Source: Corallochytrium limacisporum Hawaii
Lineage: Eukaryota > Protista > Pluriformea
Reading direction: 5' to 3'
NCBI GenBank assembly: GCA_002811645.1
Contig: PDIP01000122.1
Coordinates: 34,098 to 98,097, forward strand
Length of the DNA stretch: 64,000 bases
The notes beneath the pieces are model-generated. The model ran no database searches and was not told the DNA's origin. It saw only the letters and a program-made list of their open reading frames with translations. Below, piece after piece: positions 2,876 through 25,733 of this stretch; position 1 is the stretch's first letter; the number at the start of each line of letters is the position of its first letter. Both the position numbers and the translations under genes were made by a program.

Positions 2876-3447
2876 TGTTCTGTTCAATTAGTACTATTAG
2901 AGTGCCAATGCTTGCTCGCAATCTCTCGAGTTTTATCTAATCACCGATATACAAACTATTACTTTCTACATCACACAAACACTGCCACCATGGCCACATA
3001 TGCGAGGATCCAATCCCCATTGAGGGCGACTTCGAATACCTTTTCCGTCTGTCTATTACCAAGTGGTTACGTCCAATTCTTACTGCACGCGCACAGACAT
3101 TGGCACAGCACCGCATCTTCACGGGAAGATGAAGAACGATGAGCATGACCTGGGGAAGCCAATGGTCCGTGTGCGTTCGGTTTGCGCACACCACAGGGAT
3201 ACCACCCAGCGCAATGCGACTTGAGTCCTCCAAGAATACTTTAGTCTGGGGCTTCATTCTTCTTCACTAAGATGCAAGCCCTGGGGCGACCACAGGGAGC
3301 CGCCGTGCAATTCGCAACTGCCACCCCCCCCCCCCTAGCTTNNNNNNNNNNNNNNNNNNNNNNNNNNNNNNNNNNNNNNNNNNNNNNNNNNNNNNNNNNN
3401 NCCCCCCCCCCCCCCCTAGCTTTTCGCCCCCTTCACCCTCTCGCTCC

Positions 3448-3492
3448 CTCGCTCTCTCGCTCTCTCGCTCTCTCGCTCTCTCGCTCTCTCGC
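3448..3492. repeat. (CTCG/CT) microsatellite next to an assembly gap
   Basis: Tandem ctctcg-like units seen directly. Confidence 0.85.
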
Positions 3493-4212
3493 TGACTCGC
3501 CCAGCTGAGACCCCCCTCCGTCCGAACGAGCAAGTGCCGCCAACCCCGGCAGCAAGGGAAATGAGACCCCGACGAAACCGGCCCTTACTTGGGCACGGAC
3601 CCTCTCTCTCTCTCTCTCTGTCTCTCTCGCTCTCGCTCTCCCTCTATTTTTTTTTTTTCTTAGAGTTTCTGTGTTTCCTTCTGCCTTTCTCGACCAGAAA
3701 GGCGGGTTCTTCATTTCGCCTTCAACGGCGTGGGGTGGGAGGGGAGGGATCGGTCCCGGGCCAACCTTTGGCCATTTGCTGTGCCCCCCTATCCAAGTGG
3801 CCGAAGATACGTCCCGGAAGTCCAAGCGTTGTACAATGCGGTAATGAATTCTCTACCGATTCCACTCTACGCATTGTATTTTTAGCGGAACATGTGTGCG
3901 TTGGGAAGAGCGGCAGCAACCCTTGCCGGTCATTTTCTTTAGATTTTGACTGAACTCGCCCACACCCGCTCCCAACCCTCTTCCTTGCAGGGGAGGGAAA
4001 CTAACCAATCAAAGCCAAGAAATTTGGCCCCCTTGGCGGACAGTCCGGAGGCGTCGGTCCAATGGCTACCCAGCCGTGGGCCAACATTTGAATGCTTTTT
4101 CTCTGCGCATGCACAGGAATGTACGTCACGATGATGCGGTTCCCTTGTACCTTGCGTACCATGACCCTGATTCTGAGAAAATGCTTAAGTATGTATTTCA
4201 TCACTGTTGTTT

Positions 4213-5844
4213 CTATCCGACCTGGGCATCACGGTCCAGAGCTTCGCGGATGATGACGTTCGTGTTGGAGCCACGCGGATCGAGGTCGCGGGCCCACGAG
4301 AAGTTCATGGTGGCCTCCTCCGGCCGGCCTATCTTCTTGTAGATGCGACCCTTGAGAATGTAAACGCTGGATTCCATGGGGACCTCTTCCTCGAGCCGAC
4401 TTAGAACGGCCAGGGCCTCCTCATCCTTGCCGTTCGCGGACAGGAGGATGGCGCGGATAAAGACGACCAGTGGATTACCAGGCTCGGCCTCTTCGGCCCT
4501 GTCCAACTCCTGCAGTCCCTTTTCAATCTCTCCCCTGCTCTTCAGGCATAGCGCTACGTGCACGTAGAGCAGTGGGCTCTTGTCAAAGATTTGAATGGCT
4601 TGTTTAAAGAAACCCTCGGCCTGCTCGAAGAGTTCCTTGCGATAGTATATTAGACCCAGTCCATACCATGCATTGTAGTGGCGCGGACTGTTCTTGGTCG
4701 CGGACCGGAAGCACGTTTCCGCCTTCGCGTAGTCCTCGCTTAGAATGTACTCGTAGCCCAGTAGAGAGTATGCGTACGAGAAGGTTGGATCGCATTGAAT
4801 GGCCCGCTGGAAGAACTTGAGGGCCATATTGTGTTGATTCTGTAGATTGTAGCAATTACCGAGGGCACACCAGGTCTCCGCACTAAACCGGTTCCAAGTA
4901 TACAGGTCATTGCAGAGATAGCTCAGTTCCTTGTCGTCTTTCAGATGCCACAGTACAGTAGAGTAGACTTCCATGAGCTCCACCTCACTGGCATCACCTG
5001 GATGACACTGGCGGGCTTTCTTGAAGGCTTTCTGGCTATTTTTGTAGTCCCGCAAATCGTACCAAGCCCGTCCAGCCCGTGTATTAGCCCAGTAGGTGTC
5101 CTGCAGGTGTGGGGGCAGCGACTTGAGCAGTTCCAGTGCTGCCCTTGACTCAAAGGCCATGAGTTTCTCATAGGCTGCGTACAAGGTGGTAAATTCCTCA
5201 GTAAGATCGTCATCGGAAGTCATTGCCGCCGCTGCTTGGCTCTTGCGTGACGATCGTGTGGCCGGGCCTCCGCTGGAGCTGCTTTCCTGCGCAATGTTCC
5301 GCACGTCCTCTGCGCCTTGGAACCCGAGGTCTGCCAGGGCTTCGTAAGCAGCCCAGCACTTGGGATTCTTTTTCAGGGCAAGCGAATAGCATTCCGCCAC
5401 CTTGCCTTGCCAGGTTGGTACTTCAAGTTCCAAGTGCTGAAACAAATCACCCAGCAGCAGATACACTTCTCCTTTCCGGTCAGGAATACGCAAGACTATA
5501 GACTGCTCCGAAAAATCCTCCACAAGTGCATTGATCGCCGTCTCCCAGCGGCCTATCTTCAGAAGAAGCTGTGCGAATACGTACACTATGCTCCATTCTG
5601 TGTCCGTTGGTTTCGGCGACAATGCTGGGTTGTTGGCGTACTGGGCCAGGACGTCGACGGCCTTGTTGTACTGACCGTCTCCCTTTAGAGCGAGAGCATA
5701 CTGCAAGCCGATGTATGCGTCAGAGGGATACAGATGGTGCACCTGGCCGGCCAGAAACTTTGCTGATCTGTAGTCCTCGACTGTAATCATGTACTCCACG
5801 TCCTTGAGGATTTCATTCTTCGTCCAGCCCGTGGACCCCGGCAT
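4213..5844 (-). CDS. CDC27: APC/C subunit 3 (Cdc27), TPR protein
   Basis: 543 aa. Motifs MEVYSTVLWHLKDDKELSYL, ETWCALGNCYNLQ, YAYSLLGYE, PRHYNAWYGLG and MNFSWARDLDPRG are typical of Cdc27. Confidence 0.93.
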   Translation of the reverse strand: MPGSTGWTKNEILKDVEYMITVEDYRSAKFLAGQVHHLYPSDAYIGLQYALALKGDGQYNKAVDVLAQYANNPALSPKPTDTEWSIVYVFAQLLLKIGRWETAINALVEDFSEQSIVLRIPDRKGEVYLLLGDLFQHLELEVPTWQGKVAECYSLALKKNPKCWAAYEALADLGFQGAEDVRNIAQESSSSGGPATRSSRKSQAAAAMTSDDDLTEEFTTLYAAYEKLMAFESRAALELLKSLPPHLQDTYWANTRAGRAWYDLRDYKNSQKAFKKARQCHPGDASEVELMEVYSTVLWHLKDDKELSYLCNDLYTWNRFSAETWCALGNCYNLQNQHNMALKFFQRAIQCDPTFSYAYSLLGYEYILSEDYAKAETCFRSATKNSPRHYNAWYGLGLIYYRKELFEQAEGFFKQAIQIFDKSPLLYVHVALCLKSRGEIEKGLQELDRAEEAEPGNPLVVFIRAILLSANGKDEEALAVLSRLEEEVPMESSVYILKGRIYKKIGRPEEATMNFSWARDLDPRGSNTNVIIREALDRDAQVG

Positions 5845-6312
5845 TTTTTGTAGCCTCGTTGTTTTAGAATCTATCCAACGCTAAAAGATCTCTGCGTCAG
5901 GTCCCTTCACGTATCGTTGTTACAACCAAAAGTTCATTGCTATGAATCCCTGTTTGTCCTTTGATAAATATGTTGTGTTCGTTCTCTACTTTGGAACTTT
6001 TCACTGTGGCAGACTCTGATTTCCCGTTTGCTTTAGATAGGTGCCTTGGCAGGGTCTCACCGTGTGTCGTCTGAACGAACTGGTACGGCGCCCGGTGGCA
6101 GTCCCTTTTTTCGCGCCCAAAAAATGACAGAGCCCCTCCCCCACAAGGAGATCCAAACGGGGACCCGGCCCCCCTCCCTTACCAATATAAAAACACACAC
6201 AACCTCATTTTCACACACAAAGTATTGTGTTCCGAAGTCAGACGGCTCCATTCCCCCCCACCTTCGCAGGGGCCAAAGGCTGAATTTCCCAGCCCAGCCG
6301 AAATGGCGAATT

Positions 6313-6401
6313 CTATACTGAATATACTGTATGATTTCAGGCTTGATTCTTAATACTCAAATTGAGCGGAGAAATGCTATACTGAATATACCGCATTTCT
6401 C
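6313..6401. repeat. 15-nt direct repeat CTATACTGAATATAC; second copy sits inside a 9-bp inverted repeat
   Basis: Copies at 6313-6327 and 6377-6391. Arms GAGAAATGC (6369-6377) and GCATTTCTC (6393-6401). Confidence 0.8.
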
Positions 6402-6904
6402 AGCCTTCTGGCCAGCAGAGGGTGAGGAAGGGGGTGGGCCTTCCAACACAGCCTCTTCCCCCAATACTAAATGTACCTACGGCCAGGTCGTTTGCCCGGT
6501 TGCTTCTACTTGTCCGCCCCCAGCCGGGTTGGGGGTCGTAGTGCAATAGTGAATGTACCGTGCCGTCCCGGCTGCAGATGGGTTCTCCACACACCCCCTA
6601 ACCCGGTATGCAACCCTAACACCCTTGGACGGTTCCACCCGGCGGGAGCCCATCTGTGCCGTACTGAACAGACCGAGGGTTATGTACGCTTCCCTGGCGC
6701 CTTCTCACTTTGGGTTGGAAGTGCGAACACTTGTCGACACGCGCCAAGGGGTAACACACATGCCAGCTTGTGGCTCATTGGTTTCGTCCCTCGTGTCTTG
6801 CAAGCGAAGGTATTTTGGTGGATGTCATGCTTTGCAAGGAAGAAGGAGAGAAATGTACCAGTATTCTCTTAGGTCTGAATTATTTCTTATTGGAATCATT
6901 CAAT

Positions 6905-12758: not shown

Positions 12759-13899
12759 GACTTCATTCTTTACTTAGTCTATCTGATAAGATCAAAAATA
12801 AACCTTAGTCACCTCGTCTTCTTGTGGTCAAGTTCTGGTCCTGTGACGGTGAACTCGGGAGCACCTAGGCCACGGAAAACATCAGCAAATGCTCGCATTC
12901 GTCTGGTTTCCGGATTTTCTATGCAGCGTGATCTCAACAGCACGTTCTCTTATTCATTGCAACAAGAAAGAAATTCATCTGTGCCACCGCTACACTGTAT
13001 GGCAGTGACAATTGTGTGCGTTCCTCGTCGGTCTGAAGTACCCTGAGCAAAGTGCTTGAATCTTTTGACCTCGCACCGAGGCCCGTCAACGGCGGTTTGG
13101 GGGGTGCGCCCGGGGGGGNNNNNNNNNNNNNNNNNNNNNNNNNNNNNNNNNNNNNNNNNNNNNNNNNNNNNNNNNNNNNNNNNNNNNNNNNNNNNNNNNN
13201 NNNNNNNNNNNNNNNNNNNNNNNNNNNNNNNNNNNNNNNNNNNNNNNNNNNNNNNNNNNNNNNNNNNNNNNNNNNNNNNNNNNNNNNNNNNNNNNNNNNN
13301 NNNNNNNNNNNNNNNNNNNNNNNNNNNNNNNNNNNNNNNNNNNNNNNNNNNNNNNNNNNNNNNNNNNNNNNNNGGGGGGGGGGGGGGGGGGGGGCCTTGA
13401 GGGGGCCCCCCCCCCCCCCGGCGCAGGGCAGGAGGTCGCTGTTTTCTTGGCCGGGTCGGGGTAGGGTAGGGGTAGGTAAGCAGCCCGGTCGGAATGCCGG
13501 TACGTTCACCGTTGCAAAAAGCCAACCTCCTGCTTAGATCCGCAGCCTATTTTTACTATACTTCTTTTTCTTTGGGTCTCCCTCCCTCCCTCGCTGTTAT
13601 ATCTTTGCGCCTTAATTTTTTTCATTTTCCAATCCCTGGTGTCTTTGAGCCTGGGTGTGAAACACCAGACACCGGGGCGGTGGTTCCATGTCACGGTTAA
13701 TTGCGGACGACGTCCCGAGGCAAGAGTGGCGTGCTTTTGGACAGTTTCAGTGTTGTTATATATACATATTGATACTATGGAGACAATTTATTCTGTTGTT
13801 TGGTTGCCAATATGAATGGCCTTATTCCAATGCGCTGTGATTGGGGGCCTGAATTGTGCATGATCTGCGTGTTCATGCCCTTTTGTGTGTAGCACGGTC

Positions 13900-16032
13900 C
13901 TACTTTCTCATGCCCGTCTGGTAGCGACTAAGCAGGAACATGAACACCATCCGCCAGAAGACAATCATGGCGATGATGATCAAGGAATTACGAAGACGGA
14001 TGTCGCTGTCGACACCGTACAGCGAAGATATGTACTCATCACCGGACATCTCAGGAATGACGCCCGTGGCGGTTTCCACGTTGGTCAGAGTCAGTCCACT
14101 AAAGTCGTTGTACAGGAACGACTGGAAGATGTAGTTGTGGAAGGAGATGTAGTAGCCCCAGATCCAGTAGTCGGGAATGTCCGATTTGACAATGAAGAAT
14201 CCGGACATGAGCATGAAGAAGCCAAAAATCATGGCAGCAATGGCAATGCCGAGCAAGGCAAATGGAGCGACCACACTGATCGCAATCATGAAGCTCTCCG
14301 CCGTGTACAGGGCCAGGAACAGGTTCAGCACGAAGAAGAAGTACTGGCCGGCGCCGGGGTTCAGCTGGACCATCCAGTAGACCGGAATTGAGGAGCTAAG
14401 CGCGATCAGAAAGACCCAAGGGATGGAGCTCAGGGTGTTGGCCAGAGTGTACGCAGCCGGCCGATAGCAGCCAGAGGCCCGCTCGCGAACAAAGACGGCA
14501 CGCTCATCAACAAAGGCTGGCACAGCGGCCACAGTCATGAAGGTCATAAAGGCCGCCACGAAGAAGAGAATGCTGACACGATCATTGATGGCGTTACCGT
14601 CAGTGCCCACGTCAAAGAAGAGAGTACCGATGACGATACCAAGGATGAAGTACATACCCACGCGAAGCCAGTAGACGGCAGGGTTGCGCATGGCGTCCTG
14701 GAAGTTGCGCTTGACCAGGACCTTGGTCTGGTACCAAGTAGAATTGGCGAACTTGGAGGACAGGCCCAGTTTGGTGGCTTGGATATCGCAGTAGTCGTTC
14801 TCGTAGCCTTCCTTAACCTCCTTGATCTCGTCGGCGACGTGCTGGAAATAGTCAGAGTCCTTGAAAGCCTGCGCCAGTTCAGCAACGTCGACAGCTGTGC
14901 GCTGCTTATGATGGGCACGGCTCCGGCTGCCGCTGCTCTCCTTAGTCTCATCGCTATCATCAGTTTCCTCAACGATGTCGTGATCGTCCCCGTCGATATC
15001 GTCAAATTCGGGGTTGACTTTGGCCAGAAAGAAGTCTGGCGGATTCACATCCTCGGGACAGGGCAGACCGCGGTCAGCAAAGAACCGGACGCTGTTCTCT
15101 GGTTTGCCAAAGTACGCCATGTGGCCCTGACTCAGGATCATGACCTTGTCAAAGAGCTGGTACATCTTGTTGCTCGGACCGTTCAGGGTGGTCACGATAG
15201 TGCGGCCTGTGCGGGTCAGTGCGCGCAGGCTTCGGATCAACGACATGGCCGCGGTGGAATCCAGCCCACTGGTGGGCACATCGAGGAAGAGTATGCAGGG
15301 TTGTGCGACCAGCTCGACACCGATGCTCACGCGGCGCTTCTGGCCACCACTGATGCCCCGGATGAAAGAATTGCCAATTTTTGTGTCCGCGGCAATACGA
15401 AGGCCGAGATCATCGATAGTGTCTTCCACAATCTTTCGCTTCTGCTCATCGGTGAACTGGTCGGAGGGCAAGCGGAAATGGGCGGCATACATCAGGGTCT
15501 CGCGCACAGTTAGGGTAGGCAGCAGCGCCTCGTCTTGCTTGACGTAGGCACTGACACGCTTGAAGAAGCGATTTGGTTTGCAACTGTTGACGCGTACGAC
15601 ACCTTCGTAGGCCTTGGGCCTCATCTTTTGCGCGAGGATGTCCAGTAGAGTGGTCTTGCCGCTACCAGAGGGACCGAGGATGGCCAGGAGCTCGCCGCTC
15701 TGCACCACACCGCTGACGGAGTCGAGAATCCGGCGTTCCTTGTGGATTCTCTCCTCCTCGCCGCGGGCGTTGGTGTAGCTCATCTTCACATCGGCCTTAT
15801 ACGTGACATCCTCGAACGTGAGGTTCAGTCTGCATCCGACGTCTGCTGTCTTGGCAGCAAAGTCGGTGTTTGGATCAATGGTTGACTCCCGCTGAGGCAT
15901 GGTCAGGGTCATCTGTGAATCCCGAGCAGTGCTGACCACTGAATTTGTAGCAGTCTCATTATGCTCTTCAGACCGAAGGACCTTAACGTCGATGTTGTTG
16001 ATGTGTTTGGTTTCTACGGCATTGGGTGGCAT
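13900..16032 (-). CDS. ABCG/White-family half transporter with degenerate Walker B and H-switch
   Basis: NBD-TMD order. Walker A GPSGSGKTT and signature ISGGQKRR are canonical, but Walker B reads LFLDVPT and the switch reads TLNGP. C-terminal multi-pass TMD. Confidence 0.95.
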   Translation of the reverse strand: MPPNAVETKHINNIDVKVLRSEEHNETATNSVVSTARDSQMTLTMPQRESTIDPNTDFAAKTADVGCRLNLTFEDVTYKADVKMSYTNARGEEERIHKERRILDSVSGVVQSGELLAILGPSGSGKTTLLDILAQKMRPKAYEGVVRVNSCKPNRFFKRVSAYVKQDEALLPTLTVRETLMYAAHFRLPSDQFTDEQKRKIVEDTIDDLGLRIAADTKIGNSFIRGISGGQKRRVSIGVELVAQPCILFLDVPTSGLDSTAAMSLIRSLRALTRTGRTIVTTLNGPSNKMYQLFDKVMILSQGHMAYFGKPENSVRFFADRGLPCPEDVNPPDFFLAKVNPEFDDIDGDDHDIVEETDDSDETKESSGSRSRAHHKQRTAVDVAELAQAFKDSDYFQHVADEIKEVKEGYENDYCDIQATKLGLSSKFANSTWYQTKVLVKRNFQDAMRNPAVYWLRVGMYFILGIVIGTLFFDVGTDGNAINDRVSILFFVAAFMTFMTVAAVPAFVDERAVFVRERASGCYRPAAYTLANTLSSIPWVFLIALSSSIPVYWMVQLNPGAGQYFFFVLNLFLALYTAESFMIAISVVAPFALLGIAIAAMIFGFFMLMSGFFIVKSDIPDYWIWGYYISFHNYIFQSFLYNDFSGLTLTNVETATGVIPEMSGDEYISSLYGVDSDIRLRNSLIIIAMIVFWRMVFMFLLSRYQTGMRK

Positions 16033-16779
16033 TGTGTCTGTGTTTCTGTGGTTTCCGAAATTGCCTTTCTGTGTATATCCAATGCTAACCGGCTATTCAC
16101 GGGATCTTGTTTAGATCAATTCCTGTTTCTATAATACCATACGATTTCTTTCGCTTGAAAGCGCTAAGGGTTTCACTGTTTTATACTTGTCAAGTTCCAT
16201 CCTTCCCATGGGTTGGGTCCGTACATTTGTTTCCTTCTTCTACCTTGGCTTACAACCCCGATTGTCCGCTCGTGCCCACTCTCTCGACTTCTGACGAAAC
16301 GAACATCACATCACATCCTCACAGCCACCCACAACACAAGGTAACCAACCTTGCGTTATCCTACACAGTCGACAGAACCCCCCATAACCCCCAAAGGCCT
16401 GCTCTGACGGTATTGGCACTTCCTCGTTGTCCCCTGTGCGCGCTGTGCTTGCGTGCATTCGCTTCCCCCCCCCAGAGTTTCTCGCCGTCCCCAACCACCG
16501 GGTCTTCCCCCCCCCCCGGGGGGGGAGGTCCTCTCTCTCCCTACTCCTCCCCCGGTGTAAATGGCCCGTCGTTTCGAGGCGTGAAGAAGGAGAAAGGGGG
16601 GGGGGAAGGGGGGGTGGTGTTGGTGTTTGAGTTTCCTTGGTCGCGCCAAATAATTCCCGGCCGGCCCCGTGGCCTTGCTCCCTCCCCTCTCATCGTACAC
16701 AACGCGCCACCACCAAATAATCTCCCCCATCAATTCCGGGTGAGCACACTCACTCACTCAGACAACGCGCCGCGGGACT

Positions 16780-16782
<3 letters not shown>

Positions 16783-16845
<63 letters not shown>

Positions 16846-16949
16846 GTCTGTAGTCTCTGCGTCTGTCCTAACAGCCAGTACCCATCTCTCTCTCTCTCTC
16901 TCTCTGTCTGTCTGTAGTCTCTGCGTCTGTCCTAACAGCCAGTACCCAT
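16783..16949. repeat. (CT)n microsatellite plus a ~64-nt tandem duplication
   Basis: tgtctgtctgtagtctctgcgtctgtcctaacagccagtacccat at 16841-16885 and 16905-16949, each preceded by (CT)n. Confidence 0.85.
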
Positions 16950-18537
16950 CCGTAATTTACCCCCCAACCCAACCCAACGCCAGGCCGTGCGTTCAATTCC
17001 GTTTTGCACAACTTTTTGATTTCCCGGTGCGCCGGGTGGGGTAACTGCGAGGGGACACGCAGCCCAAAAAACTAAAAAAAAAAAAGAAAAATCAAACAAA
17101 AAAGAGAACTACTAAGAACCGCACGCGCCCTCTCTCCGTTCCCTTTCCTTCCTCGCCCAAGGGTCCCCCTTCCCGGGAGACGCGAGGCCATTGTTTCATC
17201 ACACAGAGAAAATGGAGACGGAGGGCTGCCGCCGCGGCGGGGTGGTGAGTAACCCCTCTCCAGCGAGAAGGAACCGGCTCGACCGCCAGAAACGGTAGCG
17301 TGGCGTGCAGTAGGGAGAGATTCGGACTCGAAGGAAGAGCAGAAGAGTGGAAAACCGAACGCGACAAGCCCTACGTGTGCCGAGCCAATAATGACACAAT
17401 AGAGAGAAAACAAAGGCAAAGAAACTCGAAGGCGTTCCCTAATATTGTTTTTTGGGCCGTGGAGAGCCCCGCAGGTGCAGAATGAAAAGCCAATAGGAAG
17501 ACAACCCCCTACAAAACAAAGGCAAAATAAAAAGGAAGGAAGGAGAAGGAGAGAGATTGGAACGAAGCGGAAGAGACGCTGTGGTGTGGGGAGGAAGGAA
17601 GGAAGGCAGAGAATCAAACAGAACAAAATTTAAAGAGTGAGCACCGAACTTGGGAAGTGAAAAAGTCATCAAGAATCCCACTTCCCAACAGAACCCCCAG
17701 GGAAAATTATAGAGAGAGAGAGCGAGAGAGAGAGAGAAATGAAAAAGCAAGGTAAAGCGCGTCACAGTTAGAGTTGTGGCAGAGAGAGACAGAGATATTT
17801 TGTGAACCAAGGGCACCCGAAATGAAACAAACGACAAAGAAAATTCAGCAACGGTGCGGTACCCAGAAGAAAAGGGGGCGGAATTCGCCTAATCTACCCC
17901 AATCTACCGATGTGAGGTTTTGGCCGCTCCCCCCCCCCTCCCCCTTCTTCACTCCCTTCCGTCGTTTTGCTGGGCCAACAGAGAATAATTTCGACAGGGC
18001 CCAAAACGCCGGGACCGGACAGACGGACAGGAAAAGTCATTCTTATGAATATCAACGAATTTTTTCATCACAAAGCCCAGAGCATCGAAGGTTGGTGTGG
18101 TGGGAGAGGAGAGAGAAGAGGGGGGAGGGCTTCAGATTGGCCATAGAAATGTATACTAGAACTTCGGCCGCAAAAACCGGCGACTACCAATAAATATTTT
18201 TACGCTCTGCTGGCCGTTCTTTTCACTTCGACCCGGTCGCGTGTCTTCGGGATTCATCTCACTAAAGCCCCGAAAAGGGAACGCGACAGGCCGTCCTGAC
18301 GAGGACGAAAACCGAAAGTCATAGTAAAACACCGTGAAAAATATAAGTACAATTTATATAGATAGACGGGCTAAGGTGGGAGACTGGGGGACGAACGGAC
18401 GACTCCGATTAAAGAAGAGAACGGAGCCGGCTCAATCCCGTGCCGTGAATACTCCCCGACCGTGACTTATTTTTCTTTTCCGTGACCATGCGCGCGCTCT
18501 CTTGCTCTCTCTGGGTCTGTCTGTTGTCTCCATCTCT

Positions 18538-18540
<3 letters not shown>

Positions 18541-18578
<38 letters not shown>
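18541..18578. repeat. (TG)n microsatellite
   Basis: Seen directly. Confidence 0.9.
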
Positions 18579-18579
<1 letters not shown>

Positions 18580-21201
18580 TCAGCCGCGGAGTTTGGGTGT
18601 GTGTGCTAACCGGGCATGGTAGCGAGCATCCTGTAATCTTCATTTGGGAGCTCCTTCCCATCACACCATCAGTGATGTCCGTTTGCCTGTTATATCTTTC
18701 TTGATTTGCTGTGCAGAGAACACACATGTGTGATCGGGACGGGCACGGCCGTTGCAAAACATTGGCATCGATGAGCCGCGCTCGCAAGGCACGGCACGCA
18801 CACATACACACAGACAAACATGACAATCATCGATACCGGGATTTAACATGTGGCCGGTATGCACACCGCAATCCAATAACGCAATGCCGTTTATACCATT
18901 GATGGCGGGGCATGAAAGACATTAACGATTTAAAGAAGGAGTGTGTCCTGCTTTGCGGACATCATTTGAAATTCTTTCTTTTCGTCTGCTGATACACACC
19001 TGAGCTGTTTGTCAGTGGCCCCGAGCGCACACACACAAACAGCTGCTTGGTGTGTTTTAGTTCGGAAGTTATGAAACTAACTAGTATGACATACATCTCT
19101 GGTGTGTTGTTCTTTTGGTGCCTTCTAGAAGCTCTGGTGGACACTTTCACGTCCATTTATCCTTGGTGATAGCCATCGTGGGGGGCTAAGTGCATGAACT
19201 GGGCCCAACATTGCCCAAAACATCCGCAGCCCCAGGCACATTGATATCGAATCACACTCATGGTCTTGGCATGATTGAGGACACGGCTGGGAAACTTGCC
19301 ATCTGCCCGTGCTTACCATGCTCGCTATGGTGAATACCTATGCCATACGATGTCAATGGTGTTCCTCGGGTACACCACACACACACACACAATTCACGCG
19401 GTACCCCGGGGATTTTAAGGTCCAGGCAATTTCCTATCGATCGTGCCCGGTGATAGCGTTGTCATAGTCGTCCCTTCTTCGTATAAGAGTTGGTTCTGTA
19501 TACATAAACACTGATGGAGAGGCTACGGACCGTTCCATTATTTCGTATATTCACCACCACCAACACCCACCCACCGAAACGCCAACCACACCCTCCACCC
19601 CCCCCNNNNNNNNNNNNNNNNNNNNNNNNNNNNNNNNNNNNNNNNNNNNNNNNNNNNNNNNNNNNNNNNNNNNNNNNNNNNNNNNNNNNNNNNNNNNNNN
19701 NNNNNNNNNNNNNNNNNNNNNNNNNNNNNNNNNNNNNNNNNNNNNNNNNNNNNNNNNNNNNNNNNNNNNNNNNNNNNNNNNNNNNNNNNNNNNNNNNNNN
19801 NNNNNNNNNNNNNNNNNNNNNNTCTCTCCCCTTCTCCTGCTCCTCCTCTCCCTTCTCCCCCCCCCCGGAAAAGATCAGCAGCCAGCAGCTCTGGCACATT
19901 TAATCATCGGCAGTCATTACGGGCCCAACCCGACGCCCTTCCTTCTCCACACGAACACCGGGCCAGCCAAAAGGAAAAGAAAAAAGAAAGGAAAGGGAAA
20001 GAGGCAGCGGCCCTTGTGAAGAGAGAGAGAGAGAGAGAGGAGAGAAGGGAGAGAGCGGTGTGATCTGCTGCTGCTGCTGCTGCTGCTGTGGCCGCCTCTT
20101 TTTAACTCTCTGTCTCTCTCTCTCTCTCGATCGAATCTGCCACTCTCGACCTTTCTGCTTGCCGGAACATCGCAGTACATTCAGTACTAATTCTGTTCCC
20201 ATCGGGAGTCATAGAAGAAAAGTATTTTTTTTTTGAAGCGGAGAGGTGGGACGCGAAATCAAGAATTAATGTGTGACCGAGAGACCCACCAGGGGCAGAA
20301 GTCAATGGAGCCATAAAGAAAAGTCCGAAGAGGAGCGAGGAAAAATTCCCCGAACGTTGGTTATCGAAAACGGAGGGCGTGAGGGACGAAGAGAGAGGAT
20401 CGCGGCAGCTCGAGGGTGAGATTTGGTTGCTTCGCCTTTCTTTCTTTTTTCTTTTTTCTTGTTCTTTTCTTTGCCTTGGGTCGGTCGCGCGCGCTCCCTC
20501 TTCCCCCACCCCGCCCGCTGGCACTTTTTCGCCTGGTTTCCAGGCGCCTTTCTTTTCGGCCGATCGCTCAAGTGCGCGTTCAAAAGGGGTCCCCCTTTGT
20601 CATAACTTTTTTTTTAAAGGGGGCCAAAGGAAGGGTCTCCCCCCCCCGGGGAGGGGGGGGGGAAGCCGGAAGAAAGGGAAGGAGGGGAAGGAGCAAGCCA
20701 GTGCGAAAGGAACCCTCCTTTTGCTCTGCTGCACACACAAAACGCACGCACGCACGCACGCACTCACTCACAGGGGCGATGCGCAGTAAAGGCACATCGC
20801 AACACCGCACCACCCACCAGCACCCGAAACGGTTTGGTGTCCGGTACGGCCCATCCGAACTGACAACAGATCATTCTCGGGGACTCGCCATCGAAACCAT
20901 CCTGCTGTGATGTAATGTAGGATGGGATGTGGGATGAGAACTTTGTAGTCTGCTCGGGACTCCGGTGGGCAGGAAAGTATTGCACAGGAAAGGTATGTCA
21001 AAGCCGGTAGGATCTGTGTCCCAAAAATCAACAATCAGTAAAGCAGTAAACTAGAAAAGCGATCAATCACGTATTTAAAGCAGCGACTGGGTCTGAACAA
21101 CATAGACCGTACGTATGGGAACATAGAACTAAAGATCTACAGCCTAGCCCACGAACAGAACGAACAGGGTTCATTGCGGAACTCAACACACACATACCGC
21201 C

Positions 21202-23040
21202 ATGGACATTAAGACTACCACACAGAATAACAAGAACAACCATCAGCGCCAACCGGTCCACCTGGAGTGGAAGGACCTGGTCCTGGAAGTTGATATTAAG
21301 CCCAAGGATGGCAGCAAGCCCTATGCCCGCAAGATTCTACAGGGCCTGACCGGATCAGTACGTCCCGGAGACTCCCTCGTGGTCATGGGACCCACCGGTG
21401 GTGGCAAGACAACCTTTCTGGACACTCTCGCTGACAAAATGGCCAGTGGTCGTCAGAGTGGTACCATCACTTTCAATGGACAGCCCCGTGACAAGTACTT
21501 CAAGCGCTTTGCTGCCTACGTCATGCAGTTTGACAGTCTCAAGCCCGAACTCACTGTGCGGGAGACGCTCGAATACGCTCAGAATCTTACCCTCGACCCA
21601 GACGAGTTCACTGACGAGGAAAAGGAAACTTATTTAATTAAGATTTTGCGCCAACTCGGACTGGAGTCTGCAGCCAACGAACGTGTCGGGGGTGGCTTCT
21701 TTAAGGGCATCAGTGCTGGCCAGCGCAAGCGCCTGTCAATCGGTGTGGAACTGATGAAGATGCCATCGCTCGTGTTCCTAGACGAGCCCACCACCGGCCT
21801 GGACAGCGCAACGGCCTATCAGGTCATGAAGACCATCGACGGACTTGCAAAGAGCGGTCTGACAGTCATCTCCACCATTCACCAGCCCAACCCGCAGATG
21901 TACGACCTCTTTGACAAGATTATGCTCCTCTCCCAAGGCCGCCTCGCTTTCCTTGGCCCCGCCAAGGCGGCGCCTGGATTTTTCAAGCGCGTCGGCTATC
22001 CGATTCCGTCTTTCGTGAATCCGGCAGATCACTACATGGACGTCGTTAATGTCGACTACATTGGTGACTTTGGCCAGGTCGACGTTCAGTCTATTGTCGA
22101 CGAATTTGCAGCCACTCGCAGCCAGTACGAATTCGATAGCGAGGCAACGGAGGCACGGAAGCGCCGTTGGGCCCCTGAACGCAATCCCACGCAGCCAGTG
22201 ACATTCCAATCCACATTTGCAGTGCCCGCTACGAAACAATTTGGGACGCTACTGAAACGAAATATTATCTCCGCCTGGCGCAACCCGCTTGTGTACTGGG
22301 GTCGCGTGGTCATGTACTTCATGCTGGCGGTGGTCATGGGTACGCTCTACTTTGACATTGGGGACAATTTCAGCAACATTTTGAATCGTATCTCTGTCAT
22401 CTTCTTCGTTGTCGCGTTCTTCACGTTCATGCAGGTGTCCGCCATGCCTGCCATGCTCGAAGAGCGCGATGTCTTCACCCGCGAGCGTGGCAACGGTAAC
22501 TACGGTGTCATGACCTACTCCCTGGCCAATGCGGTTGCAGCTGTGCCTTGGGTCGCCCTGACCGCCGTGACCAGCTCGGTGCCTGTCTATTTCATGATTG
22601 GACTGAACGATGATAACGGACGGTACCTTTACTTCCTGCTCATGTTCTTCCTTGCCCTCTACGTGGCAGAATCCGTTGTCGTCGTCACGTCCGCGGTCGT
22701 GAATATTGCACTAGTCGGCATCGCGGCCGCAGCAGCCTTCTTTGGCTTCTCTATGCTCACTTGTGGCTTCTTCCTAAGTCCGGGCAACATTCCGGACTAC
22801 TGGATCTGGGCATTCTACATTTCTTTCCACAAGTATGCCTTCAACGGCCTGATCTACAATGACTTCAGTACCATCACTTTCGAGGACGGCACCATTACGG
22901 GCACATACGTCCTAGACAGCCGTTTTGAGATCACGAAGGACGAGCGCTGGCTGGACGTCGGTGTCATGATCCTCCTCATCATCTTTTACCGGATGCTTTT
23001 TGCTGGACTCTTGTGGAAGTATCAAACAGGTCGCAAGTAA
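21202..23040 (+). CDS. ABCG/White-family half transporter with variant signature motif
   Basis: Walker A GPTGGGKTT, signature ISAGQRKR, Walker B FLDEPTTGLD, switch TIHQP. The TMD is similar to the neighbouring paralog, and both end in YQTG(M)RK. Confidence 0.95.
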   Translation: MDIKTTTQNNKNNHQRQPVHLEWKDLVLEVDIKPKDGSKPYARKILQGLTGSVRPGDSLVVMGPTGGGKTTFLDTLADKMASGRQSGTITFNGQPRDKYFKRFAAYVMQFDSLKPELTVRETLEYAQNLTLDPDEFTDEEKETYLIKILRQLGLESAANERVGGGFFKGISAGQRKRLSIGVELMKMPSLVFLDEPTTGLDSATAYQVMKTIDGLAKSGLTVISTIHQPNPQMYDLFDKIMLLSQGRLAFLGPAKAAPGFFKRVGYPIPSFVNPADHYMDVVNVDYIGDFGQVDVQSIVDEFAATRSQYEFDSEATEARKRRWAPERNPTQPVTFQSTFAVPATKQFGTLLKRNIISAWRNPLVYWGRVVMYFMLAVVMGTLYFDIGDNFSNILNRISVIFFVVAFFTFMQVSAMPAMLEERDVFTRERGNGNYGVMTYSLANAVAAVPWVALTAVTSSVPVYFMIGLNDDNGRYLYFLLMFFLALYVAESVVVVTSAVVNIALVGIAAAAAFFGFSMLTCGFFLSPGNIPDYWIWAFYISFHKYAFNGLIYNDFSTITFEDGTITGTYVLDSRFEITKDERWLDVGVMILLIIFYRMLFAGLLWKYQTGRK

Positions 23041-23198
23041 ACGAGTCCTGTAAAGCTACCGCAGCAGCTCATTGTATAGTTTAGATACTACATTACATGT
23101 ACATAGAAAAGTAAAACCACACCATCACCTCATGGGCAATGCCCTATCTCTATCGCCAGTGTTTATTTGGCTGTACTCACTCTCTAGGTAGTGTGACA

Positions 23199-25733
23199 TT
23201 ACTCAATGACAGTCGGCTGCGGCAATGATGTACCAGCCAGAGCCACAGTCACAGTCCTCTCGGTCACTCTACGCGGGGTCAACTGCCGCCCCTTCGACCA
23301 CGACTTGGAGCGTATTTGGTTCTGTGCGGTCGGTTCACCGCTTGGTTTACGTGGACTTTGAAGAGGCAGTGCAATCGGTTCTATACCGGTGTCATTAGCA
23401 CTGCTACTGCCACTGCCACCGTTCTCATTGGGCGCCTCCAACTGCGGCACGGACGGCTCGTCTCCCGTCTCAACGGCTTGCATCGACAACTTCGGTATAA
23501 TCTCTGAGCGCTGCTCCTGCTGAAGGTTGGTCGGTGCCTGCAGTTCCTTCGAGTTTGGGTCCCGGTGGTGTTGGTCCATTTGTTGCTCGTCGGTCTGATC
23601 CTGCATCTCCTGTACGCGGTTGAGCAGCTTGCGGACTGAATTCAGGTACAGCTGCTTGACTTCCACGAGCAAATCATTATACATGCCAATATCTCGTTCC
23701 TTGGCATCCACCATTGATTTAAGAGTGTGTTTGAGCGTCTTGATCTCGTTCGATTGCAGCTCAAAGTGAATGATCAGATCCTCCCGGCTAAGTTCCTTGA
23801 GATTGTACATCTTTTCCACGTCTGTAGCACCCCCGCCTGGCATTGCCGCATCCAAAGACTTAAGCGTCCAGGTTACTTCACGATTGCGCTGCTCCGATGC
23901 TGTCAGTCGGACCCAGAGTCTCTGCAGGTCTTTCTGCATAGCCGGAATGATATCATTTTCAAGTTTTATGCAGCGTTTACGCATAGCTTCTTCGTTGACG
24001 CTGACGTATTCCGTTTTCAGGAGATCAACGAGGCTGCTCCCGGTTGAATTGATACTACCATCGCTCACTCCTTCTATGGATGCATTACTTTTGTTCGACT
24101 TCCCGCCGGCAGCTCTGTTACGTCTCTCGAGTTCGTGAATGATCGCTTCGTACCGCTTGAGCCGTCCGTGAGCTGCGGTCAATTCGGCCTCCAAGGCCAC
24201 AATGTTGGACCGGTCCTTATTGCGGTGATGCGGGCGATCCAAGCCGTTTACGGCAGTACGTTTGTCACCCTTGACCAGGGATGGACGTTCGTCCGTGGAC
24301 AAGCCAGTCATTTCTTGTGGCAACTGGCCTAGGGCCTCCAGCTGGTTACGCAGCTTTTTGATGCGGCGCTGCTGTTCAACATTTTCCTGTTTAAAGGCCA
24401 ATACCAAGTCATCGTCATGATTGGCTTTGTCCATGAGCATCTGCATGTGCTGCTTAAGACGCTTGTTCTCCTCCCTTGTGACCTTCAGTTTGGCGGAGGC
24501 TCCAACGTATTTCGCACGTGAATCCTCTAGCTCCTGCTTCAGTGCATCCGTCTCGTGCTTTAAAGCATCCAGCTGCGCTTGCTTGGTTTTCTGTGCCTTC
24601 GCAATTCCTGACCTTTCGTTATAGTTTGCATTGCCAATGCTTGCACCGCTGTTGGCATTACCAGCGATGTCTGTGGTCGAAGGGTTGCGCGCAACGGCGA
24701 GCTCTTTCTCCAACCGGGCGACTTTAACTTGCAACACTTTGATACGTTCCGCCCGACCACGCCAGGAGCTCTGCCGGATCTTTTCCAAGTTCGTTCCACC
24801 ACTACTGCTCAGCCCCTGGGCGGCATCTTCGCCAACTTCGCGGAAAAGCAATGTCTTGTACCGCTTCGTCTCTGCCTGGCTACTCTCCAGGCGCTTGTGC
24901 ATATCCTGTAGCTGCGCCTTGAGCAACTTCATTTGGCTCAGGTTCGGCAGGACGACGCCTTCGTTACCGCCAGTCTCCGATTGGATTCCAGTCTTCAAAG
25001 GGCTGGCGCCACCGCCGCTGCCCGAACTCGCAGACCGTAGCCTTTGCTGGTGATGCTGGGTCTGAGCGACGCCCGATTTGCTCTGCTGCCACGCGAGCTC
25101 GGTTTCTGCCTGACGAAGGCGCTGCCTGAGTTGGCCGTTGCGGCCCCTTTCGGCCTCGTAAGCCGCCTGAACTTCCCGTCCACGCTTAGCAAGTTGCTGG
25201 ATTTTGCGTTGATACTCAAGCCCAACGTCTCCTGTACTACCGGTGATGTTGGACAAAGAGTCAAGATTTGGCTTCGCGTCTATCCCGTCCTTGACATTAA
25301 TTCCTAGCTTGCTGCCTATCGTGGATGAAGGATCACTGAAGTCCATCCCTGTGTGGATCTGTGGTGCGATTGAACCGGTGGCGATCTGATTGCTCGGAAT
25401 TGTTCCCCCTGTACTATAATACCGGCGGCCTGTTCTCCCATGGGGTTTATTGGTCATGGATTTCGGCCTCCTTGGCGCACCAACGCTTGGGAGTATGTCA
25501 AGCTCCAGTCCAAGATCTTCATCGTCTGGTACTTCTGGTGGTGCGTCCACTGATCTGTTGTGGCTGAGGCCGGTAGATTCGAAGACTGCATTGGTGAAAC
25601 TTTTGTTCTGACCTCCGCTCATGTCCTTCAAAGGTGAAGACCGCATATTCGTGTATGACGAATGCCGAAACGCAGAGCTCTGCAAGTGCAGAAACCGATC
25701 CCGCAATTCCGCTGTCCGTTCCGCTTCCGTCAT
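23199..25733 (-). CDS. CCDC13: CCDC13-like coiled-coil protein (centriolar satellite/ciliary)
   Basis: Long coiled coil containing LFREVGED, SWRGRAERIKVLQVKV and LMDKANHDDDLVLAF, matching CCDC13 motifs (WRGRAQQI.VLQ.KV; K..HDDELI.AL). Confidence 0.75.
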   Translation of the reverse strand: MTEAERTAELRDRFLHLQSSAFRHSSYTNMRSSPLKDMSGGQNKSFTNAVFESTGLSHNRSVDAPPEVPDDEDLGLELDILPSVGAPRRPKSMTNKPHGRTGRRYYSTGGTIPSNQIATGSIAPQIHTGMDFSDPSSTIGSKLGINVKDGIDAKPNLDSLSNITGSTGDVGLEYQRKIQQLAKRGREVQAAYEAERGRNGQLRQRLRQAETELAWQQSKSGVAQTQHHQQRLRSASSGSGGGASPLKTGIQSETGGNEGVVLPNLSQMKLLKAQLQDMHKRLESSQAETKRYKTLLFREVGEDAAQGLSSSGGTNLEKIRQSSWRGRAERIKVLQVKVARLEKELAVARNPSTTDIAGNANSGASIGNANYNERSGIAKAQKTKQAQLDALKHETDALKQELEDSRAKYVGASAKLKVTREENKRLKQHMQMLMDKANHDDDLVLAFKQENVEQQRRIKKLRNQLEALGQLPQEMTGLSTDERPSLVKGDKRTAVNGLDRPHHRNKDRSNIVALEAELTAAHGRLKRYEAIIHELERRNRAAGGKSNKSNASIEGVSDGSINSTGSSLVDLLKTEYVSVNEEAMRKRCIKLENDIIPAMQKDLQRLWVRLTASEQRNREVTWTLKSLDAAMPGGGATDVEKMYNLKELSREDLIIHFELQSNEIKTLKHTLKSMVDAKERDIGMYNDLLVEVKQLYLNSVRKLLNRVQEMQDQTDEQQMDQHHRDPNSKELQAPTNLQQEQRSEIIPKLSMQAVETGDEPSVPQLEAPNENGGSGSSSANDTGIEPIALPLQSPRKPSGEPTAQNQIRSKSWSKGRQLTPRRVTERTVTVALAGTSLPQPTVIE

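What the first reader, a model, noticed from the sequence alone, without database searches (positions are those of the whole stretch)
13900..23040. Head-to-head ABCG paralogs with complementary broken ATPase motifs: predicted asymmetric heterodimer
Seen: the minus-strand ABCG has a canonical Walker A and ISGGQ signature. It lacks the catalytic Glu (FLDVPT; GTG codon at 15277-15279) and the switch His (TLNGP instead of TIHQP; 15178-15183, several base changes, so not one sequencing error). The divergent plus-strand paralog keeps FLDEPT and TIHQP but has a variant signature ISAGQ (GCT at 21715-21717). Known: each ABC site combines Walker A/B and the H-switch of one subunit with the signature of the other; vertebrate ABCG5/ABCG8 are a head-to-head heterodimer with one degenerate site. 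Inference: all three lesions fall into the same composite site in a heterodimer, leaving the other site fully canonical, whereas each homodimer would be defective. The lesions differ from those of G5/G8, suggesting independent evolution of an asymmetric, co-regulated ABCG pair.
Basis: partly seen in the sequence, partly recalled or inferred. Interest (0 to 1): 0.82.

Follow-up and report, generated by a model that had tools for sequence, protein, structure and literature searches.

The report
Conserved asymmetric ABCG transporter gene pair
Two neighbouring, oppositely oriented ABCG half-transporter genes carry complementary defects that would all fall into one of the two ATP sites of a mixed dimer, and the same paired arrangement and defect pattern recur in distant protists, pointing to an old, undescribed two-subunit pump that arose separately from the animal sterol pump ABCG5/G8.

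Summary
G-A (13900-16032, minus, 710 aa) has an intact Walker A and an ISGGQ signature. It has Val for the catalytic Glu (GTG, 15277-15279) and Asn-Gly for the switch His-Gln (15178-15183). G-B (21202-23040, plus, 612 aa) keeps Glu and His but has ISAGQ (GCT, 21715-21717). Both are intact single ORFs. A transcript-like contig from an independent run matches G-A with no differences.

- The two are each other's closest paralogs in this 24-Mb genome, and no other ABCG there carries these lesions.
- Exhaustive search and trees place them in one clade (96/93) with two types. All four A-type members lack the catalytic Glu and keep a canonical signature (window, Andalucia godoyi, Rigifila ramosa, an unnamed Logan organism). 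All four B-type members keep every catalytic residue, and three of them have a non-Gly third signature residue.
- In the unnamed organism the A and B genes are again head-to-head on one gap-free contig.
- A fold of the two membrane domains passes (0.72 against 0.00 for the best control), but this does not identify the partner.

Not shown: physical pairing, co-regulation (transcript starts at least 4.9 kb apart), a defective G-B homodimer, or continuity across the assembly gap. I rate it a new variant of a known kind.

The parts
13900..16032 (-). G-A: A-type ABCG half transporter, 710 aa. It is the subunit with the catalytically dead nucleotide-binding domain.
   Evidence: Single ORF. Pfam ABC_tran 1.2e-25 and ABC2_membrane 1.2e-49. 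Falls in the A-type clade in the trees.
13866..16179 (-). Approximate extent of the transcript-like X1 contig that covers G-A.
   Evidence: a 2314-nt contig with its first 1130 nt laid on 16179-15050 and 0 differences. The left end (13866) is inferred from the contig length. X1 has no cover from 16250 to 21049.
15652..15675 (-). G-A Walker A, GPSGSGKT (residues 120-127), intact.
15340..15354 (-). G-A signature, ISGGQ (residues 227-231), canonical. In a heterodimer it would complete the consensus site.
15277..15294 (-). G-A Walker B, ILFLDV. Val252 (gtg, 15277-15279) replaces the catalytic Glu.
   Evidence: Confirmed with 0 differences by the X1 contig. The A-type relatives have V, T or G at this position.
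15175..15189 (-). G-A H-loop, TLNGP (residues 282-286). Asn284-Gly285 replace His-Gln.
   Evidence: Rigifila P0377 has Asp at the His position.
16033..21201 (.). 5.2-kb divergent intergenic region: low-complexity, CT-rich, with no credible ORF and no Rfam match. It contains the unbridged assembly gap at 19606-19822.
21202..23040 (+). G-B: B-type ABCG half transporter, 612 aa. It is the catalytically complete subunit with a variant signature.
   Evidence: Single ORF. Pfam. B-type clade supported at 100/99. X1 holds 100% of its sampled words.
21388..21411 (+). G-B Walker A, GPTGGGKT (residues 63-70), intact. GPTGxGKT is shared by all B-types.
21709..21723 (+). G-B signature, ISAGQ (residues 170-174). 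Ala172 (gct, 21715-21717) stands at the third position.
   Evidence: B-type relatives have I, Q or G at this position. ABCG5's degenerate ISTGE is changed at the same position (PMC6824678).
21769..21786 (+). G-B Walker B, LVFLDE, with the catalytic Glu195 present.
21874..21888 (+). G-B H-loop, TIHQP (residues 225-229), with His227 present.

Best explanation
G-A and G-B are the two subunits of an asymmetric ABCG heterodimer, a type II ABC exporter with the nucleotide-binding domain ahead of the membrane domain.

The consensus ATP site would be built from G-B's Walker A, Q-loop, Walker B Glu195 and His227, closed by G-A's canonical ISGGQ. This site hydrolyses ATP and drives transport.

The second site would be built from G-A's intact Walker A, Walker B Asp and Q-loop Gln. 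It has Val252 where the catalytic base should be and Asn284 where the switch His should be, and it is closed by G-B's ISAGQ. This site binds ATP but does not turn it over. It would act as a structural or regulatory latch, as in other ABC exporters with a degenerate site.

The pair descends from an old duplication. That duplication predates the split of the window organism, Rigifila and the Andalucia lineage. The pair has stayed head-to-head in at least two lineages.

Shown: the motifs, their rarity, intact and transcribed ORFs, clade structure, type-specific lesions, and conserved synteny.
Inferred: physical pairing, ATP binding without hydrolysis at the degenerate site, and direction of transport. 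The substrate is unknown. The nearest relatives are general WBC/ABCG2-like lipid and xenobiotic exporters.
For: 1. Motifs and codons are verified. An independent transcript-like contig matches the G-A lesion region exactly. X1 holds all sampled G-B words.
2. The two are 40% identical and each other's closest paralogs. The other ABCGs in the genome are 31-33% identical. All nine other half-size paralogs fall outside their clade.
3. No other ABCG nucleotide-binding domain in the genome has these lesions.
4. The exhaustive HMMER search and the motif table give the B-types: P0245 (ISIGQ), Rigifila P0251 (LSGGQ) and P0265 (ISQGQ, with D-loop TNQDS). All have intact Walker A, Q-loop, Glu and His.
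5. The A-types all keep the Walker A Lys and an SGGQ signature, and all lack the catalytic Glu:
   - Andalucia P0005: Glu to Val, Q-loop Gln lost.
   - L031-A: Glu to Thr, Q-loop Gln lost.
   - Rigifila P0377: Glu to Gly, His to Asp.
6. Careful tree: A+B clade 96/93, B clade 100/99. The AU test does not reject a single A clade (p = 0.50).
7. L031 is a gap-free 7.7-kb contig from another organism. It carries an A-type gene (1961-4036, minus) and a B-type gene (4931-6868, plus) head-to-head.
8. Every lesion maps to one composite site and none to the other in all three known pairs. Glu loss: 4 of 4 A-types against 0 of 157 other half-size ABCGs. Non-Gly at signature position 3: 3 of 4 B-types against 12 of 156, p = 0.0026.
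9. Membrane-domain complex prediction: ipSAE 0.72 against 0.00 for the best of three controls. The three runs agree in at least 97% of contacts, and the partner's pLDDT is 79. The mark was reached by 51 of 78 solved complexes and 2 of 108 mismatched pairs.
10. Known biology: loss of the Walker B Glu, often together with H-loop change, plus a changed signature in the other domain, is the hallmark of degenerate sites (PMC7756269). ABCG5's degenerate signature ISTGE is changed at the same third position (PMC6824678).
Against: - No direct evidence of a physical G-A/G-B complex exists. The complex prediction passes for any close family member and may reflect solved ABCG dimers.
- The signature change Gly to Ala is mild. 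The Rigifila B-type has a canonical LSGGQ, so B-types may also work as homodimers, and the signature lesion may be a relaxed rather than a required feature.
- In this genome the two transcript starts are at least 4.9 kb apart. A shared promoter is therefore not evident.
- Adjacency crosses an unbridged assembly gap.
- No B-type partner was found for Andalucia. Its genomic context is not on record.
- Only five organisms are known, two of them from transcriptomes. The A-type subclades are not resolved as one clade in the free tree (73/29).
Confidence: 0.72

Rival explanations
1. G-A is a shared, catalytically silent partner that pairs with several ABCG half transporters, as Drosophila White pairs with Brown or Scarlet. 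G-B works mainly as a homodimer. On this reading the adjacency only reflects an old inverted duplication.
For: - G-B keeps every catalytic residue, and Gly to Ala in the signature is mild.
- The Rigifila B-type has LSGGQ.
- The genome holds at least nine other half-size ABCGs.
- It also holds a second head-to-head ABCG pair with fully canonical motifs. Head-to-head ABCG duplicates therefore occur here without asymmetry.
Against: - Head-to-head A/B linkage is kept in a second organism at about 40% protein identity.
- Relaxation of signature position 3 is enriched in B-types.
- A and B types co-occur in all three organisms where both could be looked for.
Confidence: 0.15
2. G-A acts without ATP hydrolysis as a homodimer, for example as an ATP-gated channel, a receptor-like regulator or a facilitator. 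It has nothing to do with G-B.
For: - Walker A, Walker B Asp, Q-loop and D-loop are intact, so ATP binding is likely retained.
- Non-hydrolytic ABC proteins exist, namely CFTR site 1 and SUR (PMC7756269).
Against: - A-types keep a perfectly canonical signature in 4 of 4 cases. That is expected if the signature serves a working site on a partner, and it would be unnecessary in a dimer with two dead sites.
- The conserved linkage to a B-type also argues against it.
- No ABCG homodimer lacking the catalytic Glu in both sites is known to me.
Confidence: 0.07
3. G-A is a decaying duplicate or an assembly or sequencing artefact.
For: It lacks two residues essential for catalysis.
Against: - The 710-aa ORF is intact, with a conserved membrane domain.
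- An exact match lies in a transcript-like contig from another study.
- The same Glu loss is seen in three other organisms at 36-47% identity.
- The H-loop change involves three codons.
Confidence: 0.02

Closest known systems
Vertebrate ABCG5/ABCG8 sterol exporter
   Same: - Half-size ABCG subunits encoded head-to-head.
- An obligate heterodimer with one consensus and one degenerate ATP site.
- The degenerate signature (G5, ISTGE) is changed at the same third position as ISAGQ (PMC6824678).
   Different: - The G5/G8 degenerate site keeps the Walker B Glu and has a Walker A Lys-to-Arg change in G8 (PMC7756269). Here Walker A is intact, and the catalytic Glu plus His or Q-loop Gln are lost.
- G-A and G-B score higher against ABCG2, ABCG16 and Cdr1/Pdr5 than against G5 or G8. 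They are therefore not orthologues.
- The spacer is 5.2 kb here and 0.9 kb in L031, against 374 bp.
TAP1/TAP2 (ABCB2/B3) and bacterial TM287/288 or TmrAB heterodimers
   Same: The lesion logic is the same. One subunit loses the Walker B Glu and the H-loop His, the other carries the altered signature, and all lesions fall in one site. ATP stays bound at that site while the consensus site hydrolyses (PMC7756269). The exact TAP motifs are from my own knowledge.
   Different: Those are type I (ABCB-like) exporters with the membrane domain ahead of the nucleotide-binding domain, a different fold and a different domain rotation axis. The replacement there is usually a conservative Asp. Here it is Val, Thr or Gly.
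Fungal and plant PDR full-size ABCG transporters (Pdr5, Cdr1)
   Same: ABCG fold, with a degenerate site whose Walker B Glu and H-loop lesions lie in one domain and whose signature lesion lies in the other (PMC7756269). These are the best PDB sequence matches.
   Different: - PDRs are single fused chains.
- They also lose the Walker A Lys.
- G-A and G-B are not specific counterparts of the N and C halves. Both prefer the same half in 140 full-size ABCGs.
Drosophila White/Brown/Scarlet and plant ABCG11/ABCG12 heterodimers
   Same: Half-size ABCGs that choose between alternative partners (own knowledge).
   Different: To my knowledge these have no subunit lacking the catalytic Glu, and they are not kept as head-to-head pairs.

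Membership tests
ABCG (WBC-type) half transporter | Reverse topology: one nucleotide-binding domain followed by one ABC-2 type membrane domain, about 600-700 aa | tested here: met
   Pfam ABC_tran is N-terminal and ABC2_membrane C-terminal in both proteins. The best solved matches are ABCG2, ABCG16, ABCG1 and Cdr1/Pdr5.
ABC exporter with a degenerate nucleotide-binding site (asymmetric heterodimer) | All departures from consensus fall in one composite site, and the other site is fully canonical | tested here: met
   Motif tables for the window pair, the L031 pair and the Rigifila pair.
ABC exporter with a degenerate nucleotide-binding site (asymmetric heterodimer) | The two subunits physically form a heterodimer | tested here: inconclusive
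   Membrane-domain fold: ipSAE 0.72 against 0.00 for the best control. A pass does not tell which family member binds. Conserved head-to-head linkage is indirect support.
ABC exporter with a degenerate nucleotide-binding site (asymmetric heterodimer) | ATP is hydrolysed only at the consensus site, and the degenerate site binds ATP stably | not testable with these tools
   Needs ATPase and nucleotide-trapping assays on the purified complex.
ABCG5/ABCG8 orthologues | Degenerate Walker A (Lys to Arg) in one subunit plus ISTGE in the other, and closest similarity to G5/G8 | tested here: not met
   Walker A is intact in both proteins. The lesions are in Walker B and the H-loop. PDB bit scores: G-A 319 to ABCG2, 238 to G8, 200 to G5; G-B 285 to ABCG2, 221 to G8, 199 to G5.
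ABCG5/ABCG8 orthologues | Head-to-head gene arrangement | tested here: met
   Divergent orientation in the window and in L031. The window's adjacency crosses an unbridged gap.
PDR full-size ABCG | Two half units fused in one chain, with G-A matching the N half and G-B the C half | tested here: not met
   They are separate genes on opposite strands. BLAST against 140 split full-size ABCGs shows no reciprocal preference for one half.

The most novel reading that the evidence does not exclude
The A/B pair is a very old, obligate asymmetric ABCG heterodimer. It arose before the divergence of lineages as distant as jakobids (Discoba) and Rigifila (CRuMs), so close to the base of eukaryotes. It is independent of ABCG5/G8 and of PDR transporters, and it has been kept as a head-to-head gene pair over that whole time. 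That would make catalytic asymmetry an ancestral rather than a derived state within part of the ABCG subfamily.
Probability: 0.35. Interest if true: 0.75.

Novelty: new variant of a known kind. Interest (0 to 1): 0.62.

Why it matters
Degenerate ATP sites are common in ABC exporters, and their role is still debated. Within half-size ABCGs the only well-studied asymmetric heterodimer is ABCG5/G8, which uses a different set of lesions.

A second, independently evolved ABCG pair would be a natural experiment. It lacks the catalytic base outright (Val, Thr or Gly), and it lacks either the switch His or the Q-loop Gln. It could show what a type II exporter needs from its silent site.

Its conservation as a divergent gene pair across very distant protists would also give a rare example of long-lived head-to-head linkage of interacting subunits. 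It would also be a marker for the early history of the ABCG family.

The intronless genes of about 2 kb are easy to express for biochemistry and cryo-EM.

Tried and rejected
1. PDR-half idea. In the PDB search, G-A's best stretch lay on the N half of Cdr1/Pdr5 and G-B's on the C half. This suggested the pair might match the two halves of PDR transporters. I split 140 full-size ABCGs and compared BLAST scores. G-A and G-B prefer the same half, with no reciprocal pattern. Rejected.
2. The word-index search with the eight-sequence A/B alignment returned nothing new, not even the alignment's own members. The G-B word search also missed G-A itself. Only the exhaustive search found the relatives.
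3. The metagenome scan with G-A found only distant bacterial ABC ATPases.
4. Genomic context for Andalucia P0005 is not on record. P0245 lies on a 1.9-kb transcript-like contig with no neighbours.
5. A literature search for the motifs LSAGQ, ISAGQ and LAAGQ gave only unrelated hits. Searches for run accessions, and for ABCG in jakobids or Rigifila, found no description of this pair.
6. I looked for genes or RNAs in the 5.2-kb spacer. There are only low-complexity ORFs, no Rfam family, and only simple-repeat matches elsewhere in the genome.
7. Interface columns from the predicted complex are mostly hydrophobic residues shared by both types. A few type-specific positions exist, for example small in B against large in A at B367/A456. 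These are too few to argue for complementarity.
8. The complex prediction passed but cannot separate hetero- from homodimers. I give it little weight.
9. Pseudogene or sequencing error is rejected.
Its support is the 1.00 word share in X1.

Full report
**What is there**

The window is intron-poor DNA of about 52% G+C from a 24.1-Mb assembly in 286 contigs. Small word shares of the gene turn up in marine and sponge metagenomes, which hints at a marine protist.

Two long single ORFs face away from each other:
- G-A: 13900-16032, minus strand, 710 aa.
- G-B: 21202-23040, plus strand, 612 aa.

Both have the ABCG half-transporter layout, with ABC_tran followed by ABC2_membrane. Their best solved relatives are Cdr1/Pdr5, ABCG16, ABCG2 and ABCG1. 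ABCG8 and ABCG5 score clearly lower.

**Check of the observation**

| Motif | G-A | G-B |
|---|---|---|
| Walker A | GPSGSGKT | GPTGGGKT |
| Q-loop | Gln present | Gln present |
| Signature | ISGGQ | ISAGQ (gct, 21715-21717) |
| Walker B | ILFLDVPT (gtg, 15279-15277) | LVFLDEPT |
| H-loop | TTLNGPS (ctg aac ggt) | TIHQP |

The codons were read directly.

These states are rare.
- In an alignment of about 20 ABCG nucleotide-binding domains from the same genome, only G-A lacks the Glu and the His, and only G-B has SAGQ.
- Among 160 half-size ABCG homologues collected from three searches, the catalytic Glu is missing in three proteins. All three turn out to be relatives of G-A.
- The switch His is missing in two of the 160, again both relatives of G-A.
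- The third signature residue is Gly in 145 of the 160.

**The gap, reads and expression**

The scan's program asked that the gap at 19606-19822 be tested first. It lies in the 5.2-kb spacer between the genes and is flanked by low-complexity sequence. Neither ORF touches it.

Contigs from four public runs were laid on 15050-21049, within the 6000-letter limit.
- None of them bridges the gap. The DNA contigs stop at 19605 and resume at 19823.
- So the two genes are neighbours only on the strength of the original scaffold.
- Run X1, from a different study than the probable source runs, has one 2314-nt contig on 15050-16179 with no differences. By its length the contig runs on to about 13866.
- X1 has no cover at all from 16250 to 21049. 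This is the behaviour of a transcript of G-A with a 5' leader of at least 147 nt.
- It confirms the Val and Asn-Gly codons independently of the assembly.

X1 also holds all sampled 31-mers of G-B. This supports the gct codon and suggests both genes are expressed in the same culture. The runs are contigs and their RNA label is a guess, so expression level and co-regulation cannot be judged.

The spacer holds no credible ORF and no Rfam family. Elsewhere in the genome it matches only simple repeats. The two transcript starts are therefore at least 4.9 kb apart in this genome.

**Relationship of the two genes**

G-A and G-B are 40% identical over their whole length. They are each other's closest paralogs. 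The other ABCG genes in the genome are 31-33% identical to G-B.

**Relatives elsewhere**

The word-index searches were weak for these proteins. One hit of G-A stood out: Andalucia godoyi ANDGO_05083 (P0005). It has LAFLDVPT, the same Glu-to-Val change, and it has also lost the Q-loop Gln. Its H-loop is intact.

The exhaustive HMMER search with G-B found three close half-size relatives. All three share G-B's GPTGxGKT Walker A and QF[DE] Q-loop:
- P0245, from a Logan contig: signature ISIGQ.
- P0251, from Rigifila ramosa: signature LSGGQ.
- P0265, from Logan run SRR15116022: signature ISQGQ and D-loop TNQDS.

The same search found Rigifila P0377, which has LMFLDGPT (Glu to Gly) and MAIDQPS (His to Asp).

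P0265 lies on a gap-free 7.7-kb contig, L031. Its divergent neighbour (1961-4036, minus strand, 691 aa) is another ABCG. That neighbour has LLFMDTPT (Glu to Thr), no Q-loop Gln, an intact H-loop and a CSGGQ signature. It is 47% identical to the Andalucia protein. So a second, distant organism has the same head-to-head arrangement with the same division of lesions.

**Phylogeny**

The first tree held 64 half-size ABCGs, including nine paralogs from the window's genome (IQ-TREE, LG+C20 PMSF). The eight proteins form one clade with SH-aLRT 98, and every other paralog of this genome falls outside it.

A careful run on 35 rows gave:

| Clade | Support (UFBoot / SH-aLRT) |
|---|---|
| All eight A and B types | 96 / 93 |
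| Four B-types | 100 / 99 |
| Window G-A + Rigifila P0377 | 98 / 87 |
| Andalucia P0005 + L031-A | 100 / 100 |

The order of the three subclades is unresolved (73/29). Holding the four A-types together costs no likelihood (p-AU 0.50).

The simplest history is one duplication into an A and a B lineage before the window organism, Rigifila and the Andalucia lineage diverged. Long branches (P0377, P0265) and the small sample are the main caveats.

**The pattern of lesions**

| Type | Walker A Lys | Catalytic Glu | Other loss | Signature |
|---|---|---|---|---|
| A (4 of 4) | kept | lost (V, V, T, G) | switch His (window, Rigifila) or Q-loop Gln (Andalucia, L031-A) | canonical SGGQ |
| B (4 of 4) | kept | kept | none (Q-loop Gln and His kept) | non-Gly at position 3 in 3 of 4 (A, I, Q) |

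All A-types also keep the Walker B Asp.

Each ABC site joins Walker A, Walker B, the Q-loop and the H-loop of one domain with the signature of the other. In an A/B dimer, therefore, every lesion falls in the A-Walker / B-signature site. None falls in the B-Walker / A-signature site. This holds in all three organisms where both partners are known.

Compared with the rest of the sample:
- Glu loss: 4 of 4 A-types against 0 of 157 others.
- Non-Gly at signature position 3: 3 of 4 B-types against 12 of 156 others (Fisher p = 0.0026).

These counts ignore relatedness, so they are descriptive.

The strict retention of a canonical signature in a subunit that cannot hydrolyse ATP is hard to explain unless that signature serves a working site on a partner.

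**Comparison with known systems**

A review of degenerate sites makes three relevant points (PMC7756269):
- Signature changes in the opposite domain accompany all human degenerate sites.
- Loss of the Walker B Glu is the next most frequent change and is often coupled to H-loop change.
- ABCG5/G8 departs from this pattern by combining a signature change with a Walker A Lys-to-Arg change.

ABCG5's degenerate signature is ISTGE, changed at the same third position as ISAGQ. The G5 and G8 genes lie head-to-head 374 bp apart (PMC6824678).

The pair described here therefore works like G5/G8 in layout. Its lesion pattern is the one known from TAP1/TAP2, bacterial heterodimers and PDR transporters. It is not a G5/G8 orthologue by lesion pattern or by similarity. 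It is not a split PDR either: G-A and G-B show no reciprocal preference for the N and C halves of 140 full-size ABCGs.

**Complex prediction**

The membrane domains (G-B 335-612 and G-A 425-710) were folded together.
- ipSAE was 0.72, against 0.00 for the best of three controls.
- The three runs agreed in at least 97% of contacts, and the partner's pLDDT was 79.
- The mark was reached by 51 of 78 solved complexes and 2 of 108 mismatched pairs.

The model gives an ABCG-like pseudo-symmetric interface. ABCG dimers have been solved, and close relatives of a true partner also pass. So this shows compatibility, not partner choice.

**What remains open**

- Physical pairing, ATP binding without hydrolysis at the degenerate site, substrate and location are all inferred.
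- The claim that a G-B homodimer would be defective is not supported. Gly to Ala is mild, and the Rigifila B-type is canonical.
- Co-regulation is not shown.
- Adjacency in this genome crosses an unbridged gap. The same arrangement on a gap-free contig of another organism makes it credible.
- A second head-to-head ABCG pair in this genome is fully canonical (contig C275). It was probably noted by the scan as s1-568546. Orientation alone is therefore no evidence of asymmetry.

**Verdict**

The heterodimer interpretation is the best explanation, at a probability of about 0.7. It extends to a small, old A/B family found in at least five protist sources. I found no paper describing it.

It is a new variant of a known kind, the asymmetric ABC heterodimer. 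It is of real interest to ABC-transporter specialists and for the early history of the ABCG family.

Noticed in passing
own genome G000:C275:201341-202888 (minus) and 209924-211483 (plus); loci L004 and L003: A second head-to-head pair of ABCG half transporters about 7 kb apart. They are sister paralogs on long branches (100) with fully canonical Walker A, Q-loop, signature, Walker B and H-loop. This is probably the pair noted by the scan as s1-568546.
   Followed up: partly
own genome G000:C132:9776-11266 (L008) and G000:C22:99292-100692 (L010): Two unlinked half-size ABCGs, sisters on very long branches. Their signatures are ISTGE and LSTGE (ISTGE is the signature of ABCG5), and both lack the Q-loop Gln. 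By PDB scores they are not specifically G5/G8-like. They may be another asymmetric arrangement.
   Followed up: partly
window 16033-21201: An unusually long (5.2 kb) divergent spacer made of CT-rich and other low-complexity tracts. It has no ORF or RNA family. Logan DNA contigs break repeatedly here, and depth rises about threefold at 16450-16649, so part of it is repeated in the genome.
   Followed up: partly
window 14760-15000 (G-A residues about 345-425) and L031 about 2700-3100: G-A has a 60-aa N-terminal extension. It also has an acidic, Ser-rich, probably disordered insertion between the nucleotide-binding domain and the membrane domain. The A-type of L031 has an even longer Ala/Ser/Thr/Asp-rich insertion at the same place. 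The Andalucia and Rigifila A-types and all B-types lack it.
   Followed up: no
window 23040-23199: G-B's stop and the stop of the convergent 844-aa ORF (23199-25733, minus; noted by the scan as CCDC13-like) are only 158 bp apart. Their 3' ends must nearly abut or overlap.
   Followed up: no
L031:6950-7645 (minus): The L031 contig carries a glycoside hydrolase family 25 (lysozyme-like) gene directly downstream of the B-type ABCG, and a 398-aa gene with no Pfam hit beyond the A-type. Neither has a counterpart next to the window's pair.
   Followed up: no
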